Source: Selaginella moellendorffii
Taxonomy: Eukaryota > Plantae > Lycopodiophyta
Assembly (NCBI RefSeq): GCF_000143415.4
Contig: NW_003314269.1
Coordinates: forward strand, 2,177,544 to 2,241,543
Reading direction: 5' to 3'
DNA: 64,000 nucleotides
Shown here: piece after piece, positions 9,553-52,212 of the stretch
Position numbering within the stretch: the first letter of the stretch is position 1
How the letters are laid out: every line of letters begins with the position of its first letter
The notes under the pieces: generated by a model
The model's input: the letters and a program-made list of their open reading frames with translations, nothing else
Databases searched by the model: none
What the model was told of the DNA's origin: nothing
Made by a program: the position numbers and the translations under genes

Positions 9553-10541
9553 TTACGGGTGGTGCCACTTGTTCTTGCTCTCGGGGCTGTACATCCTGAA
9601 AATCCAGGAACACAAGAAAGGATGAGAAAAAAGTTTTGACTCGGAAACTACAACCATCGACATGGAAGAAGCTCTCCCTGATCTTTCTTCAGGTGTCCAA
9701 GACACTGATCACTACCCTGCGTTTGTGTATGAGAAGTGATTGGTAGCGATTCTTACGATCTATGGACACCGAATCTGCTAAACTCTATCTTATCTAGAGA
9801 AACAAAAAAGTTCCTTAGAGCTCGTAAGAAATCCATGCAAGAAACACTAAAGCATGAAGAGATAGAGAACCAGCTAGAGCTCGGACGAACAAGGGCTAGA
9901 AACCAAGAACACGAGAGAGACGGCTTACCAGTCATACACAGACGGAGAGTTTGGTGTCACATTGTCGTAGCGAGCGGAGCCCTGGCGCTCCACTGCCCGC
10001 GCTCGCCCGGCTCCCGGATGGAACACCGATCGCCAAACGTTATCTTTGGGCGTGGTTCCTGTTCACGAGAAGAGCACAGTTAGATTCCAAAGACTCCCTC
10101 AAAATCTCGACAAGATAGCAAAGAATCGTGGGAGACAAGGCGAGGACTAGCAAGATCTTGCAGATATTACCAGGAGATCCAGCCATAGAAGATGGGGAGC
10201 CGACGCTAGAGGCGGCTCCCGTCGGGGTAGCCGGCGCGGACTCGTCGCCAAAGCTGGCCGATCGGATCAGCGGCGGGGGGCGGATGTTGATGCTCTGCGT
10301 GACCATGGTGCTGGAGCGCTGATATTTCGGGTCTCGCGCGCCAGGGGCGCCGAGCGGATCACCTGCCACAAAGATCGACCGTGTGAGCAAGAAAACGATC
10401 GCAATATCGCTGCCAGAGACCATCCAAGCCAGTGAGATCCCTGGCGACCGCCTTGGCATTCTTGTTGCGCAGCATTCCCAGGCCTCGATCCGGCTGAGGC
10501 CCGGCCACCACATCGTCCCACAGCTTGTCAAGAAGCCCCAT
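9553..10541 (-). CDS. Dormancy-associated/auxin-repressed protein (DRM1/ARP family), two candidate terminal exons
   Basis: MGLLDKLWDDVVAGPQPDRGLGMLR, DNVWRSVFHPG, PNSPSVYDW. Last exon is either 9716-9689 (VVISVLDT*) or 9595-9553 (MYSPESKNKWHHP*). Confidence 0.93.
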
Positions 10542-43599: not shown

Positions 43600-46500
43600 T
43601 TTACTTTGAAATTTCTTAAGATATCAATGGGTTCTTTTTTTTAGCTCCAATCAGATTTTATTACTGTGTGGAAGTCATATCAAGTGTTAGAGCAATATAA
43701 TATAACACTTCACTCATAACTCCAATAAATTATTGAACACCAACTACTTCTTGGTTTCAAATTAAATTTTAGTATGCTAGCAAAATTTAATAACATATGA
43801 TCTAAGTTTTGTGGCTTCCTCAACCAAGTTAGACTTCAAAGCACCATGTAACCTAATTAATTTTCTACTTTAACTTATGAGATTAATTTTACTATGATAC
43901 CTCTTTCTTGGTTTTCTATATTCTTTAGAACCTTGATCTCTTTGTTTAACACTTCACTAGCATGTTCAGCAATACTGATCAAAAGCACATCACCATTAAT
44001 AAGTTGTAACAATTGCACTATGCTTAACATCAAAGTTCCAAATGGTAACCATTAATATTTCATAATACAATGTAGTTCATAAGGGATATTTCCACCTTGG
44101 CATTTGTGAGGATATCAAAGATCTCATGCTTTATTATCTAAATCTAATATCTTTCATGATTACCAATGTTTTTGTTATTTATTTTGATAATAAGAAGAAT
44201 ATCAATTGAGACATCATCATTAAACCTTTGTTCCTCATCTAATGACCCTAGTCTTGGAGCAACCAACACATGAGTAATATGTTATTACAATCAAGATTGA
44301 AGTCATATATTAATAGTATCTTTCTAATGCTAAAAGACAATGTCTAATCATGAACTACCTTTGGATATATTATAGCCATAAAGATCACTTATAGGAGTAA
44401 TGTCCTTATCCTTGCACTTGCTATTAGGCTCATGGAGAATGAAAATATTCATTTCAATTAAAGAGAATAATTTGATAAAAAATCTATAAGGGTTTAGAGG
44501 GAAAGAGCCCATAAAAAAAATGTACCCCCTTTTCCAATTAGTTAAAAAATTTAGAATATTTAAAGTTATCATTTTTACATTTGACTAATACCCAAGATGA
44601 ATGACCTCACAAGAAGTTCAAATTCAAAAGTTTACATTTGATATTACAGAGGTATCAGATTTGAATTTATTGATTGATTAAAAGAATCACACCATATGTT
44701 AAAATTAACATTTAGTATATTTAATTTGGTCCAATTGGGTTTGACATGAGGTAAGGTGTCAAAAGATTAAAGCTTTTGGGAGAGGTGTAACTCTTAGCTT
44801 TTGTTCACGAGGGTATGAATTTTTAAGAAAGCGTAATAAGTTGTAAGCAGAAAAAAAAAATTAAAAATTTGAGAAATGATTCATAAGAATCCAAATCATC
44901 TACAATATTTTAAATTAAGTATCCTAAAACCTTTAACCAATTAATAAAGGGAGTGCACTTTTTCTTATAACCACTTTCCCTTTATATTTGTCATTTTGAG
45001 TTCATTCCTTCTTTATGAATCTTTAAACATTTCTAAATTATTACTCAATTTGAATTCATTAAGTTTAATTTCTCTTTTCAAGTTTTAAGTGATAGTGGTG
45101 TTGATAAAAATTTCATTGACAAAAATTTTTCTCTTTATTGTGGCATTCTTTTTTACATTGTTCAACTTGTGTTGAAGTGATGGATGGTCAATAAATTTCT
45201 TTTGGGCTCATCAAACATAAATTAAGTTGGTATCTTTATCTCAAAGACCTTTATCATTTTTTAATCTTTTTTGATTTGATCTTGTGAATTTAATAGTGTA
45301 ATAGATGTGGTTTAATGATTGAAAAAGTTTCCCTTCATTTAAGTATTATTCTCATGATTTTTTAATTAAAATTTAGCATATTTCTTCATATAAATTTTGA
45401 AATGTTAGTTATCAAAATTTTGATTTTGTCTTTGTAATTGTTATTCATTTAACATCAACTTCATTTATTAGGAACAAATCCACTCTTACCTTAAAAGTAT
45501 GCTAAATTTGAGGATATTTTTTATAAAGGAGATTTAACATCTTGCCATTGTATCAACCTTTTAATTATTCTATTGATCTTGTAGAGGGGTAAATTATCAC
45601 TATAAGTGTGTTATAACTCCTAAATAATAGGGAGTTTAAGTGTCTACAAGATATTAGAATTAATTTTAATCAAGTATGCTAAAAACTTTTTTTGTATGTA
45701 CAATATGCATTAACAAACCAAATGCCTTAACATGTTTTACATAAACTCCTTTAACCTCTTTTTCTTACTCTACTGCTTTGAAAAATCTAGCTTTATGAAT
45801 TATATTAATTAATCTTCCACTTCCTCAAGGATTTGATAATGTTTTTATTGTGGTCTACCAATTTTCCCGAATGAAAAATGTTTTACCATATCAAAAGATT
45901 ATTGATGAATAACAATTGGCTAATCTTATTTGCAAGATTATTCATCTCTATAGACTATTGAACAATATTATTAATGATCAAGAGCCTTAGTTTATTTCCA
46001 TCTTTCATTTATATCAAAAGCAAATTATCAACTTCTCACCATCCTCAAACAGATAACTAATTGAATTATACTATTCAAAATTTTAAGTAGTAATATGGAT
46101 TTTTTATTTTCTAATAATAAGATAATTATGTTTTTCTCCTTTTTTTTATTGAGTTAATTATAATAATTTCTAGCACTCTTTAGCACATAATATCTAATTT
46201 TTTGTTAACTATGGTTTTTATCCTTGTGAGTAATATTCATTTCCTTTATAAATGATTCTATTATTGCTTTGTTACCACTTGGGATTCTTTTCATAAGGAA
46301 GTTCATCATTATTTTTCTTGTGTTCAAACTGCTTATTTCTGTGCAATTGATAATTTTCTCTAACTTAGTCATTCTTTCCAAAATGGATCAATAGTTAAGC
46401 TTATTAAAAGATTATATTTCTGTGTTCTAAATTTGATTATTAATGTCTAGGTCCTTTTTTTTGTGCTCTTTTGCATCTCTAAAATCATTTTTCGATTCAA

Positions 46501-46950
46501 TCTTTCACCATTCATGGGCTTTCATTTTGCACTTTATTAAAATATTATCATTTCTGATCCCATTTATATTTCAACTTAGTATTGATATCATAAACTTATT
46601 ATTTGGCCTTAGTCACTCTTTTAGAGATTGTATTTAAGAATTTATTTTCCAATTTGCTTATACTTTTGAGCTAATTATAAATTTTATCAGGCATTTAAAC
46701 CTTATTTCACACAAATTTAGTTACTATTTAGTGTTCAGCATCAAAGGGGATGATGTTATATATTTACTATATCTTTTTATTTACTAACGATTATATTCAT
46801 TAATTTTTATAATAGTAAGAATTGAGCCTTAAACCTTTAATGATATGTTATTCATATGGAAGGGATCTAAGATTAATATAGACTCATACCTAGGATGTGT
46901 TGAAGGTTTTGAAGACTTTATACTTAGAATGTTTAACATAAATCCATTTT
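43600..46950. mobile_element. Highly decayed AT-rich retrotransposon debris, including a + strand integrase fragment (~45780-46070)
   Basis: Degenerate NLPLPQGFDNVFIVVYQFSRM..IIHLYRL..SHHPQTD integrase-like text; LTR-like repeat copies at ~44460-44636 and 44842-44990; no ORFs. Boundaries approximate. Confidence 0.6.
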
Positions 46951-48459
46951 CCTCCTTTATTATTTAATATTTCTGTGAATTTTATTATATCTCCTTCTCT
47001 CCACAATGAGCTCTTGACAATATATACTTTAGTATTTTATGTTAATTTTTTTAATAATAACTTCATAATAAAGTTAAGAAATATAATTATATTTAGCAGT
47101 AATAACCCTAAGTAGAACAAGTGGATCTTTAAATATTTCTTATAAGTATTATGTTAGAATTTATCAAATAAAAATAAAATAAAAATAATAAATATATATA
47201 ATAATATAAAAATAATTTAGTGGTGTGAGATCTAAGTCTATAGCTATAATACTGTATACTAATATTACTATAGTGGGCTTTTGATACCTGTCAGATTGAT
47301 TTTAATTTGGTATATAAGTGGCTAAGGTTGTTTTAGGCTAATTAATGTGTAGATTTCTGTATTCTTTTTCTATATTCCATGCACTTATATTGGAGAAGAT
47401 GAGGGGAAATCTTGATTATCTCTAAGAAGTGCTTGGATTTAGAATTTTGGTTTAGATTTAAATTTTGCATACTCTAGATCTCACTTTCTTTATAACTTTT
47501 TCAATTTCTTCTTTTGCAGCAACCTTCTTCTTTGACTCTAGAGTAGTAATTGGTGCAAGTTATATGGTTGCAAATAAAAAATCACACTCAATTGACGGTG
47601 ACATTCACAATACTATGTACAACTTTCATTTTTACTGCCAATCTCCACGTCCAACTGGAATTCTTCTATGGGAATATTGGGGATGATGTGTACCATTAGT
47701 TTAATCATTTTATGGTGATTATTACCTATCATTCTTGGGATAATACTTGGCATTTATGTAAGTTTCCCAAATGTTTCTAAGGGATAGCATTGCAATGGTA
47801 CAATGGTTTAAATGTAGCCACTTGTGCCAATTGGAGCATTTTCCCAAATATTTTTAAGCACACATTTGGATAGTTTGACGATTGTGATGATGACTGACTT
47901 TATTGATGATGTCTTAATCCACTCGGAGGGGATTGTATATAACTAATTTTTTCATTTTACTTTAGTCACTTAACCACACCTTCAACACTTGAAAGAGTCT
48001 CACTCACAACCTTCATAAGTTTTATTCCGGACTTGGCTAACCCCGAGAATGACATTTATACCACTAAACCTTTGCACTTGGTCCAAGTGCTCCACATGTC
48101 CAATTCGATGATTGACACCCAAAGGTACCACCGATATATCAGTCTATTATGTTAAGGCCATGCCCATTCATTTTTTTTACACCGGTGATCCAACATTACT
48201 TACATCACAGCCCCGTCTCTCAAAGACTGAGGCATCTGTCCATAAGTGATCATCTTAGATCCACTCCTTAGCATCCTTAGGATGCTCGTAGACATGGGGA
48301 ATAACCATCCCTAATATCTCTTTTTCAGTCCCTACCAAGTCCCTTTCTATCCATAGCCGTGTTCACCAACATTGCCACTAATTCAAGGCCCATAAGCCTG
48401 ATGAGTCAAACTCAGTCTTAGTCTCGGACTCATACTCGGACTTGGTCTTGGTCTCAGTC

Positions 48460-48660
48460 TCAATTCCATCTTGGACTCCACCTTGGGTTCCATTTCGGAC
48501 TCCATCTCGAACTCCATCTCGGGTTCATCTCGGACTCCATCTTAGGTCCATTTCGGACTCCATCTCAAATCCATCTCGAACTCTATCTCAGACTATATCT
48601 TAGGTCCATCTCAGAATCCTTCTTGAACTCCATCTTGGATTCCATCTTGCATTCCATCTT
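48460..48660. repeat. Degenerate 12-bp tandem array (consensus GGACTCCATCTC)
   Basis: About 16 imperfect units inside a ~1 kb insertion (47934-48906) that splits the RT region of the old element. Confidence 0.85.
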
Positions 48661-50280
48661 AAGTCAATTTTGACATTTCCACATGTAATGTGTTCATCCT
48701 TTTGTGTCCCTTTTCTAAAGACTCACTTATTGCTCGTTTTGAGCTTGTTTATCGAGCCCTTCATTGGGAGTTCCACTCCTACTCTTGACTTTTCAAGTTA
48801 AAGCTTTTAGTTCAAATGTATTACGTTCATTTGGTTTCCACTTTGGCCACTACCATGTGGCACCCTTTCGACTCCACTTTTGGGGCTCTGGGATTTGTGT
48901 CTCACATAGATGTGGGAGGAATACATTTGTGATGTTTGGAAGATGTTAAATCAATTGTAGAAAGTTAATTTAAAGCTAAAGTAGTCAAACTACATGTTTG
49001 GGTTTAAGGACATGACTTATCTTGGATATTGTATTTCTCATAAAGGTTTGAAAGTTGATTTTGACAAATTTGTGGTTGTTTTAAAGTTACTTATTCCAAA
49101 GTGTGTGAATGATGTGCAATGCTTCTTGGGCAAGATGCAATATTCAATCATTTTGTTGATCATCTTTTGGATTGCACTACACTATTGTGAGCATTGTTGA
49201 AGTCATTAAAATTATCTTCCATTTGGTCTGAGGATTGTGAACAGGTATTTATTAATTTTAAAGAGTTGTTGACAATTTGTTTAGTTTTAACATATCTTGA
49301 CTACACTTGACCTTTCATTTTGCATATGGATACTTTGGATATCGGTCTTTATGATATCTTAATGCAAGAGAGTACAAGTGTTTTTGATCAATATAATCTT
49401 ATTATGTATATCAACTATACATTATAACTAACAGAAGTGAACTACTCTACAACAAAGAATGAATCTTTAGCAATAGTTTGGGGTTTCAAGAAGTTTCATG
49501 CATATTTGTATGGTTTTTAGACATTGTTAGAAGGTGATCATGTTGCAATTATTTTATTATTGAAGTGGAAAAATTTGGTTGGTCGTACTACTTAGTGGGC
49601 TCTAACACTTCAAATGTATGATTTTGAGCTTGTTCATTGCCCAAGGAGTTTTATGACTGATGCTAATGTCGTTTCTCGAGCTCCTCTCCCTTTTTTGCTC
49701 TCTTATTTTATTCTTAACAAGCCTATTATTCTAGTATTTGTGTATTTTTTAGACAAGGATTTCATACCATCTGCAATTGCTATACTTAATTTTTAATGTT
49801 TATAAGGTGTAGAGTAAGATTTAACTTCTTTTGATGAGGTTTATGAGGCTCAAAAGGTTGAGCCATGGATCTGAAAGCTTTGTAAGAGGTTAGGAATTCT
49901 ACATCACTTGTTGATAACTTGCTATTTTAGCATTTATATTCTCAATATCGCTTTGAGGATGACATTTTTTATTTTTTTTGGGATTTATTTTGATGATCAT
50001 TTACGGTTAGTGGTGCCTTCAATATTTATTCCATGCTTTCTTCATGTTTACCATGATTCTCTTATTCTATGTAGATATATAAGATATTGTCATGTGATTA
50101 AGAAGTTGCATAAGTCTTTATATTGGCCAAAGACACAACATGATATTATTTGATATGTGTAATGTTCCCCTTGTATTACTGAAGGATAGTTAGAGTCAAT
50201 TATAATTTCTTATTTATTTAAGTTGGTGGCATTTGATTTGATAGGGCTTTCTTTACTGTTAATTGTAGGTAATGAGTATA

Positions 50281-50471
50281 TGTAAGCAACTAAAGAGAAT
50301 GACTCGAGAAATGATTCATAAGGGTTTAAATATAAAAAGAAAGGGCCTATGAACAAGAGTGCACCCTCTTTTCTAATTGGTTAAGGGTCTTGGGGTATTT
50401 TGGAGTTAAGCGTCTTTAAGTTTGAATAGTACTGAGTGACCTCTCGAAAAGTCCAAACTCAAGAGCTTATA
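50281..50471. mobile_element. Solo-LTR-like insertion (191 bp) inside the old element's integrase
   Basis: TGTAAG...CTTATA termini, flanked by GTATA/GTACA; absent from the homologous position of the younger copy. Related sequence at 44460-44636 and 44842-44990. Confidence 0.7.
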
Positions 50472-52212
50472 GTACATCATTATTCGTTGGGTGGAAGTTG
50501 ATGTTCTTTCTAGTGCATCAACAATTGTTGTTAGCTATTTCCTTTTAATCAAGTGGTGTTTTAATATTTTTATCTGAAGCAAATTTTCTCAGATAATAGT
50601 TCTATATTTATGGCTGAGGCATTTCATATTTTAATGTTTTGGCTGAGGATATGCTACACTTTCATAAGTGCTTATCATCCATAAACAGATAGCTTGGTGA
50701 AATGGCTTGTTTAGATCTTCAAAGGGATAATCATGAGGTATATGAACTTTTAGTATTTGGATTGGATGGTTATTTGTCATCTCTTTAATATCTGTATGTC
50801 ATAAAGGTATAGAGTTTTGTTAGTGCTTCACTATATAAACTCTTATATGATCATGATCTAATACTACTGACAGAGTTGAATTTACCTTCACAATTACCAT
50901 GAGCTAGCAATATTATGTCTTAGGATCAGTATTTAATAAACATTCTTCCATTTGTCCAAGTAAAGTTTATTGAACACTTGGGCCATATACAAGTGGGACA
51001 ATAACAATGCTACAACTCCCACCATCATTCATTTGCAAAGTAAAAAGTGGACAAATTAATATTAATCCATTTTCAATTTTATAGTATATAGTTTATCTAA
51101 GAAGCTCCTTGCTTAGTGGAAGGGACCATATCAAGTGTTATAGCAAGTTGGACCACAAGTTTATGGGGTTTGGCATAAGGATAATGAATAAGTAGCACTA
51201 TCTACAAATCCACTAATGCCTCTTCTTGATGTTCCTTTAAATATTAGTTTATTCACTAAAGAACCTTGATAACCTTTCATCCTTTTGAGAGGAGGGGATG
51301 ATTTGAGGTTTAATTGTATAGTTATGATGCTATATATTAAAATTAGCATAGCAAGTTTTTTTTTTAGCCATCGGATTGATTTCAATTCAAACCACTCGCT
51401 TTTGTATATAAGCTAGGGTTTTTGAGCTAATTAATATGCACATTATGCACATATAGTAGCAATAAAAATGATCTACCATAATTTATGAAATTATACATAG
51501 ATAAATTTAATATTGGGTCATACATAACTATTTTATTGGATCTTATCACTTAATTTCTATTTTAAAGCTTATGAACTTTAAAAATAATGAAGAGGTTTTC
51601 TTTAATTTAATTGATTTTAATTTTTCAGTGATCAAAAATTAAATAAATTAAAGAGGACATTAATTAAAACATTAAATAAATTAATTTTTCCATCTCAAAA
51701 TTTATAGTTCAAATATTTAAGCCTTGAGCTCGTTAACACTCTCAAATGAGACACAAGCTAGCTGTGACGAGTCCCAAACTGGGTAGCCCTTGAGATGGTA
51801 CAAGTCCTTGATTATCACCTCCCTTTCTTGTTTCATGGTTATAAGATTTAAATTAAAATTCAAGTATAGACCATTATCAAATTTATTTGTTATATGTAGA
51901 GTATGATATAATTTTCATATGGAGGTTGCAATGAGTAAAATTAAATTACATAATAATATATTTTTTCATATTATTATAATATACTATCCAACAATATTGT
52001 TAATACTATACTTAAATGATACCAAAATAAATATAAACATGTATATATTTTGTTTATACTAAAAACATATATTTAATTTTATTGACAAAAATGGTGTGCA
52101 AGCATTTTTAGTAAATTAAAAGGAACTTATTATAATTTATTAAAATTATATAACTAAATATTTTAAAATTTAAATTTAAATTTATAAAATAACTAAATTA
52201 TTTAATTTAGGT

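What the first reader, a model, noticed from the sequence alone, without database searches (positions are those of the whole stretch)
9553..9935. One DRM1/ARP gene appears to encode both family-typical C-termini as alternative last exons
Seen: the phase-2 donor inside ...SVYD-W (TG|GTAAG, ~9928) can join either of two CAG acceptors, and both supply the G that completes Trp. Exon 9716-9689 gives WVVISVLDT*; exon 9595-9553 gives WMYSPESKNKWHHP*. Knowledge (from memory): seed-plant family members end either like WLYS.ETRS.H (DRM1 type) or like W(I/V)VISALDR (the other subgroup). Inference: an ancestral alternative-splicing switch later partitioned between paralogs.
Basis: partly seen in the sequence, partly recalled or inferred. 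Interest (0 to 1): 0.75.

Follow-up and report, generated by a model that had tools for sequence, protein, structure and literature searches.

The report
Spikemoss dormancy gene, two spliced tails
One spikemoss gene of the dormancy/auxin-repressed (DRM1/ARP) family makes two proteins that differ only in their last 8 to 13 residues by choosing between two splice acceptors; liverworts, mosses, clubmosses and ferns do the same, while seed plants carry the two tails on separate genes.

Summary
A four-exon PF05564 gene lies on the minus strand. Its third exon ends in a phase-2 donor (TG|GTAAGC, 9929|9928). Two downstream CAG|G acceptors both complete the Trp codon: 9716-9689 gives VVISVLDT*, and 9595-9553 gives MYSPESKNKWHHP*.

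It is not new as an annotation. The window's exons are 100% identical to Selaginella moellendorffii RefSeq isoforms X1 (161 aa, second tail) and X2 (156 aa, first tail).

- **Both exons in one gene:** the two mini-exons sit in the same order, behind CAG|G acceptors, in three liverworts, a Sphagnum and Diphasiastrum.
- **Annotated isoform pairs:** Marchantia polymorpha, Ceratopteris and Sphagnum fallax each have both tails annotated on one gene.
- **Seed plants are partitioned:** DRM1-type genes end WLYSGETRSKHR, and homolog-3/4 genes end WVVIS(A/S)LDR. Neither kind keeps the other exon in the three angiosperm loci read.
- **Tree:** a tree built without the tails puts both seed-plant clades together (92/87), outside the dual-tail genes.

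I found no paper describing it. Condition-dependent use of the junctions and the function of either tail remain untested.

The parts
10421..10541 (-). Exon 1: ATG at 10541, 40 codons plus 1 base, donor G|GT at 10420. Encodes family Domain I (LWDDVVAGPQPDRGLG).
   Evidence: Pfam PF05564 E 1.1e-09, 39.3 bits; 100% identical to P0243 residues 1-40.
10171..10362 (-). Exon 2: Ser/Pro-rich, low-complexity middle part. It follows a 58-nt intron (10420-10363).
   Evidence: 100% identical to P0243 residues 42-104.
9929..10058 (-). Exon 3: family Domain II (NVWRSVFHPG...SPSVYD), ending with TG, the first two bases of the Trp codon.
   Evidence: Pfam PF05564 E 5e-16, 59.8 bits; 100% identical to P0243 residues 106-148.
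9927..9928 (-). Shared phase-2 splice donor GT (TG|GTAAGC). If the intron is retained the frame reads TGG TAA, so the protein ends at Trp.
   Evidence: the ORF ending ...SVYDW; the old model P0001 (117 aa) ends this way.
9689..9716 (-). Proximal acceptor (cag|G) and mini-ORF 4a: G + VVISVLDT + TGA. Gives the 156-aa isoform.
   Evidence: equals the tail of RefSeq isoform X2 (P0243); conserved in five other genomes.
9553..9595 (-). Distal acceptor (strong pyrimidine tract, cag|G) and mini-ORF 4b: G + MYSPESKNKWHHP + TAA. Gives the 161-aa isoform.
   Evidence: equals the tail of RefSeq isoform X1 (P0244); homologous LYSG.TKS.WR exon found in five other genomes.

Best explanation
This is the Selaginella moellendorffii DRM1/ARP (PF05564) gene. 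It encodes a small protein that the literature describes as intrinsically disordered. One phase-2 donor after ...SVYD-TG competes for two downstream CAG|G acceptors. The proximal, weaker acceptor (9716) adds the hydrophobic tail VVISVLDT and stops. The rest, including the second coding piece, most probably then serves as 3' UTR up to a shared poly(A) site; that step is inferred. The distal acceptor (9595), which has a strong pyrimidine tract, skips that piece and adds the polar, basic tail MYSPESKNKWHHP. The result is two proteins with identical bodies and mutually exclusive C-terminal peptides. That both isoforms exist in annotation is shown. That the tails mediate different partner binding is inferred. 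The switch dates back at least to the common ancestor of the bryophytes and vascular plants sampled here, because liverworts, a moss, lycophytes and a fern keep both mini-exons in one gene. After a duplication on the seed-plant stem, one copy kept only the LYS-type tail (DRM1/DRM2 clade) and the other kept only the VVIS-type tail (dormancy-associated protein homolog 3/4 clade).
For: - **Sequence and phase of both junctions:**
- **Public isoforms of this exact gene:** X1 and X2 carry the two tails, and the window exons are 100% identical to them.
- **Both mini-exons behind cag|G, 4a before 4b, in other genomes:** Marchantia paleacea L001, Riccia L002 and Calypogeia L003; Diphasiastrum L004 (IAISVLDS*) and Sphagnum L005 (VVITSLDK*), hidden in the annotated last intron.
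- **Purifying selection on 4a:** substitutions in 4a among the three liverworts are synonymous or Lys/Arg.
- **Same-gene isoform pairs annotated elsewhere:** M. polymorpha Mp7g06170, Ceratopteris KP509_02G019800 and Sphagnum fallax BDL97_14G070600.
- **Seed-plant tails are partitioned:** all 60 or so homolog-3/4 proteins read end in VVIS(A/S)LDR-like tails, and DRM1-type proteins end LYSGETRSKHR. Isoform lists never mix the two.
- **Angiosperm loci lack the other exon:** Nymphaea colorata homolog-3 L007 has 4a and no 4b; N. thermarum DRM1-type L009 has a last intron of about 100 nt with no 4a; Arabidopsis DRM1 L006 has no 4a.
- **Body-only tree:** seed plants form one clade at 92/87, which splits into a LYS clade (85/86) and a VV clade (80/83), with the dual-tail genes outside.
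- **One ancient clade of all VV-annotated genes is rejected:** p-AU 4e-6.
Against: - I could inspect no RNA-seq junction counts. The Selaginella X2 isoform is a Gnomon model whose read support I could not see.
- The tree rests on about 150 columns of a disordered protein. The key branches are not starred, and Selaginella sits on a long branch.
- The AU test group was defined after the tree had been seen.
- No gymnosperm genomic locus could be fetched, so loss of the second exon is shown at DNA level only for angiosperms.
- Hornworts and streptophyte algae were not examined at DNA level. Algal relatives show other tails (WYNRLD, WYNPLTT).
- Whether the 4a transcript ends at its own poly(A) site or a shared one is unknown.
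- The function of either tail is unknown.
Confidence: 0.8

Rival explanations
1. Only the distal (LYS-type) junction matters. On this view the proximal acceptor and its 8-codon ORF are splicing noise or an over-eager gene prediction.
For: The 4a acceptor has the weaker pyrimidine tract. The allelic or paralogous Selaginella copy carries only the 161-aa model (P0046). Several genomes annotate only one isoform.
Against: An intronic 9-codon ORF, with its cag|G acceptor, phase and TGA stop, is kept in six genomes spanning bryophytes and lycophytes, with synonymous or conservative changes. VVIS-tailed transcripts exist as Trinity assemblies and Picea cDNAs. The same tail is the only tail of a whole seed-plant clade.
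Confidence: 0.05
2. 4a is a cassette exon. A donor overlapping its stop codon splices it on to 4b, so the protein carries both peptides in series, as in the Calypogeia fissa model P0078 (WVVISALDR-LYSGKHKSEYR).
For: P0078. Calypogeia (AG|GTGACG) and Sphagnum (AA|GTGAGG) do have a GT across the last sense codon and the stop.
Against: No GT exists at that position in Selaginella, M. paleacea, Riccia or Diphasiastrum. No other protein among about 430 read has both tails in series. RefSeq X2 stops after VVISVLDT.
Confidence: 0.05
3. The two tail types were already on separate genes in the land-plant ancestor. On this view the dual-exon genes arose later, by exon capture or gene conversion between neighbouring paralogs.
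For: VVIS-only paralogs exist in Sphagnum (L008). VV-annotated paralogs exist in Diphasiastrum and ferns. The body tree has only moderate support.
Against: The VV-annotated non-seed paralogs group with dual-tail genes of their own lineage, not with each other or with the seed-plant VV clade. Forcing one VV clade costs 130 lnL units, p-AU 4e-6. The identical exon order, phase and acceptor context in liverworts, moss and lycophytes is explained most simply by inheritance.
Confidence: 0.1

Closest known systems
Arabidopsis DRM1 (At1g28330) splice variants; Actinidia DRM1 intron-retention variants
   Same: Same family, and the same last intron after ...VYD-TG is the site of alternative processing. 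Arabidopsis has an alternative exon inside that intron (P0158). Its splicing responds to light in seeds (PMC6746916). Intron retention is reported for kiwifruit and Arabidopsis (PMC3596386).
   Different: The Arabidopsis alternative exon uses an AG|C acceptor, which turns Trp into Cys, and it encodes an unrelated peptide (VDNEAQRKEHVALCLVGAWIK). That peptide is shared with Carica, Theobroma and Craigia. It is not the VVISALDR tail. The VVIS/LYS pair in a single gene is found only outside seed plants.
Seed-plant 'dormancy-associated protein homolog 3/4' genes (probably Clade 2b of Wood et al. 2013, PMC3596386; this equation is my inference)
   Same: They end in W(V/I)VIS(A/S)LDR, the same tail as Selaginella exon 4a, and they share Domain I and the ...SPTVYDW motif.
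   Different: They are separate genes with that tail only. The NVWRSVFHPG part of Domain II is lost. The Nymphaea locus has no LYS exon downstream.
HBS1/SKI7: one alternatively spliced gene in plants and animals, two genes in yeast (PMC6143672, listed; title and abstract only were seen)
   Same: The same evolutionary pattern: two protein forms made by alternative splicing in some lineages are made by separate paralogs after duplication in others.
   Different: An unrelated protein family. There the isoforms differ by a domain with a known function; here they differ by 8-13 residues of unknown function.

Membership tests
Pfam PF05564 Auxin_repressed (DRM1/ARP) | Score above the curated gathering cut-off (25 bits) | tested here: met
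   Exon 1 scores 39.3 bits and exon 3 scores 59.8 bits, each searched alone.
Pfam PF05564 Auxin_repressed (DRM1/ARP) | N-terminal Domain I (LWDD..AGP.P..GLG) and Domain II (NVWRSVFHPG ... SP(S/T)VYDW), as defined in PMC3596386 | tested here: met
   Both motifs are present in the exon translations. The domain definitions were read.
Isoform-to-paralog partition (subfunctionalization of splice forms after duplication) | Both forms are encoded by one gene in lineages that lack the duplication | tested here: met
   Genomic exons in six genomes. Annotated isoform pairs in Selaginella, Marchantia, Ceratopteris and Sphagnum.
Isoform-to-paralog partition (subfunctionalization of splice forms after duplication) | Each duplicate keeps one form and has lost the exon for the other | tested here: met
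   Angiosperm loci L006, L007 and L009. Isoform lists of ten seed-plant clusters. Gymnosperm DNA could not be fetched.
Isoform-to-paralog partition (subfunctionalization of splice forms after duplication) | The duplication is younger than the splicing switch | tested here: inconclusive
   The body-only tree puts both seed-plant clades in one clade at 92/87, outside the dual-tail genes, but the branches are not starred and the alignment is short. The AU test rejects one ancient VV clade.
Isoform-to-paralog partition (subfunctionalization of splice forms after duplication) | Both junctions are really used in vivo in the undivided gene | not testable with these tools
   Only annotation isoforms and transcript-derived proteins from other species were available. 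No read-level data were available.
Alternative last exon (separate poly(A) sites) versus alternative 3' splice site in one terminal exon | A poly(A) site between the first stop and the second acceptor | tested here: inconclusive
   The gap is only 93 nt and holds no AATAAA-like signal on reading. 3' ends of transcripts were not available.

The most novel reading that the evidence does not exclude
The two long-recognised subgroups of the seed-plant DRM1/ARP family (DRM1/DRM2 versus homolog 3/4) are the descendants of two splice isoforms of one ancestral land-plant gene. The splicing switch has been kept for over 400 million years (my estimate from general knowledge of land-plant divergence times) in bryophytes, lycophytes and ferns. 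It was resolved into paralogs on the seed-plant stem, and independently in some mosses. The two short tails would then be distinct, ancient interaction motifs of a disordered growth- and dormancy-associated protein.
Probability: 0.65. Interest if true: 0.6.

Novelty: new member of a known kind. Interest (0 to 1): 0.5.

Why it matters
DRM1/ARP genes are widely used dormancy and auxin-repression markers, but their molecular function is unknown. Three things follow from this result.

- **The tails are under selection.** Finding that the family's two C-terminal types began as splice isoforms of one gene says that both tails are separately selected, and it points to them as the functional ends of an otherwise disordered protein.
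- **It gives a clean experimental handle.** In Marchantia, a single gene (Mp7g06170) carries both tails, so isoform-specific edits can separate their roles without paralog redundancy.
- **It is a deep case of coding alternative splicing in plants.** It adds a well-documented, protein-changing alternative-splicing event conserved across the bryophytes and vascular plants sampled here. To my knowledge few such events are known. It is also a clear example of splice forms being partitioned between duplicates.

The isoforms themselves are already in public annotation, so the gain is the evolutionary link, not the junctions.

Tried and rejected
1. **Isoform pairs in the first homolog lists.** I looked for pairs with identical bodies and different tails and found none. 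The reason is technical: the database clusters at 90% identity, so isoforms collapse into one representative. Listing cluster members solved this.

2. **Loci that could not be fetched.** P0066 (Diphasiastrum 09G) and P0155 (Adiantum) were not on record. The Cryptomeria locus was too large to return DNA. No fern or gymnosperm genomic check was therefore possible.

3. **Literature.** Searches for Mp7g06170, AtDRM1/AtDRM2 splice variants, DRM1 isoforms, and auxin-repressed family phylogeny with Physcomitrella and Selaginella found no description of the VVIS/LYS pair. Rae et al. 2014 (Mol Genet Genomics) and the 2013 DRM1/ARP review, both recalled from memory, are not held in the library, so I cannot exclude that they mention it.

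4. **Cassette-exon reading of the Calypogeia model.** Rejected because the required donor is not conserved.

5. **Joined spliced protein.** Exons were translated and compared one by one by reference, and full-length comparisons used database proteins P0243 and P0244.

Full report
**What is in the window**

On the minus strand between 10541 and 9553 lies a small four-exon gene. Each exon was translated by reference.

| Exon | Coordinates | Content |
|---|---|---|
| E1 | 10541-10421 | MGLLDKLWDDVVAGPQPDRGLG... |
| E2 | 10362-10171 | Ser/Pro-rich middle part |
| E3 | 10058-9929 | ...NVWRSVFHPG...SPSVYD, plus TG |

- E3 is followed by the donor GTAAGC at 9928.
- E1 and E3 each pass the Pfam PF05564 (dormancy/auxin-associated protein) cut-off on their own.
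- Two AG|G acceptors lie downstream. At 9716 the reading is (W)VVISVLDT, stopping at 9689. At 9595 it is (W)MYSPESKNKWHHP, stopping at 9553.
- Both acceptors supply the G that completes the Trp codon.
- Read-through of the donor gives TGG TAA, a protein that ends at Trp.

Exons were handled one at a time by reference, and database proteins were used for full-length comparisons.

**Whose gene it is, and what is already public**

- A HMMER search with E3 alone found 44 family proteins and one unrelated repeat protein. The best hit is a 117-aa Selaginella moellendorffii model that ends at Trp.
- Listing the 90%-identity cluster of the RefSeq protein showed two isoforms of one S. moellendorffii gene. 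They are XP_002967377.1, isoform X1, 161 aa, with the MYSPESKNKWHHP tail, and XP_024527989.1, isoform X2, 156 aa, with the VVISVLDT tail.
- The window's three body exons are 100% identical to these proteins.

**Is the second exon real or chance?**

I fetched the genomic loci of relatives and scanned the region after the ...VYD-TG|GT donor.

- **Three liverworts.** Marchantia paleacea, Riccia sorocarpa and Calypogeia fissa each have cag|G + VVISALD(K/R) + TGA, then 210-285 nt further on cag|G + LYSG.(T/H)KS..(W/Y)R + TAA.
- **Sphagnum.** In a gene annotated only with the LYS tail, the last intron hides cag|G + VVITSLDK + TGA.
- **Diphasiastrum complanatum.** In the same situation, the last intron hides cag|G + IAISVLDS + TGA.

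Order, phase, acceptor form and even the TGA stop are the same as in Selaginella.

In an alignment of the three liverwort introns, the two mini-exons stand out as conserved islands. The differences inside 4a are synonymous or Lys/Arg.

Public annotations give same-gene isoform pairs with the two tails in three further species:
- Marchantia polymorpha Mp7g06170
- Ceratopteris richardii KP509_02G019800
- Sphagnum fallax BDL97_14G070600

VVIS-tailed proteins also come from Trinity transcript assemblies and from Picea cDNAs, so such mRNAs exist. Chance is excluded, and splicing noise is very unlikely.

**How it most likely works**

One donor chooses between two 3' splice sites.

- The distal site has a long pyrimidine tract. 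The proximal site has a poorer one, which is usual for a regulated proximal site.
- Only 93 nt, with no obvious poly(A) signal, separate the 4a stop from the 4b acceptor. I therefore infer that the 4a isoform keeps the 4b region as 3' UTR and uses the same poly(A) site. That makes this an alternative 3' splice site rather than two last exons in the strict sense. It is inferred, not shown.
- The Calypogeia model that strings both peptides together (P0078) needs a donor across the 4a stop. That donor is absent from four of the six genomes, so I treat the model as an artefact or a local oddity.
- The protein is described as intrinsically disordered, with a predicted strand at the ...VYDW... end (PMC3596386). 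Swapping a hydrophobic VVISxLD tail for a polar, basic LYSxETKSKWR tail would plausibly change a short recognition motif. That is inference only.

**The evolutionary claim**

- **Tail types in seed plants.** DRM1-type proteins of gymnosperms and angiosperms end WLYSGETRSKHR-like. A search from a Picea VV-type protein brought in the angiosperm 'dormancy-associated protein homolog 3/4' clade, whose members end W(V/I)VIS(A/S)LDR almost without exception.
- **Isoform lists.** Ten seed-plant clusters were listed, and none mixes the two tails.
- **DNA level.** The Nymphaea colorata homolog-3 locus has 4a but no LYS exon behind an acceptor in the 2 kb after it. The Nymphaea thermarum DRM1-type gene has a last intron of about 100 nt. 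Arabidopsis DRM1 has no VVIS exon.
- **Tree.** A maximum-likelihood tree of 36 proteins with the tails cut off puts all seed-plant sequences in one clade (92/87). That clade splits into a LYS clade (85/86) and a VV clade (80/83). Fern, lycophyte and bryophyte genes lie outside, grouped by lineage.
- **AU test.** Forcing all VV-annotated genes into one clade is rejected (p-AU 4e-6). The group was chosen after the tree had been seen.
- **Parallel losses.** Sphagnum also has VVIS-only paralogs (L008), so similar partitioning probably happened more than once.

**Comparison with what is known**

- Alternative processing of this same intron is known in Arabidopsis DRM1 and in kiwifruit (PMC3596386; PMC6746916). 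The Arabidopsis alternative exon encodes a different peptide behind an AG|C acceptor.
- The family's clades have been described from protein alignments (PMC3596386).
- In the library available to me I found no paper linking the two tail types to splice isoforms of one gene. Two relevant papers are not held.
- The general pattern, in which splice forms are partitioned between duplicates, is established. HBS1/SKI7 is a plant-relevant example.

**Verdict**

- It is a new, well-documented member of a known kind of evolutionary event, in a family whose function is still obscure.
- Interest is moderate.

Noticed in passing
L001:4095-4308, L002:4083-4367, L003:4484-4737 (alignment A2): Between the two mini-exons, the three liverworts share non-coding blocks that are as conserved as the exons. 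One is CCG.GGCGACCATT, about 30 nt after the 4a stop. Another is a stretch of about 45 nt (GCGAGTAATT ... TGCTCGCC ... CTTGGTGCAG) leading into the 4b acceptor. They are candidates for splicing control elements.
   Followed up: partly
L006:3649-3716 (Arabidopsis DRM1 last intron): Arabidopsis DRM1 has a different alternative exon in the same intron. It sits behind an AG|C acceptor, which makes the Trp codon Cys, and it encodes VDNEAQRKEHVALCLVGAWIK. Similar tails (...ALCLVAAWK, ...LSLIGAWK) occur in Theobroma, Craigia and Carica isoforms. Some rosids therefore seem to have gained a new alternative tail at the site where the old one was lost.
   Followed up: partly
L008:5333-5377 (Sphagnum magellanicum 04G paralog): Downstream of the VVIS-only exon lies an ORF, MFSAEISSSRALDH*, behind ttttgcag|CA. 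This may be a decayed, out-of-phase remnant of the LYS exon.
   Followed up: no
P0006, P0014, P0023, P0040, P0180: A third set of tails follows the Trp: WYNPLTT, WYNPLTI, WYNKLD and WYNRLD. The last is from the alga Mesotaenium. The Spirogloea model stops at the Trp. Whether streptophyte algae have one, two or other tails was not examined at DNA level.
   Followed up: no
window 44000-52000: A long AT-rich stretch (GC 0.27-0.37, against about 0.48 elsewhere in the window). Not examined.
   Followed up: no
P0063, P0136: Two plant DRM1-type proteins are filed in public databases under bacteria (Cysteiniphilum litorale and Escherichia coli), on contigs of about 600 nt. This is almost certainly plant contamination of those assemblies.
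   Followed up: no
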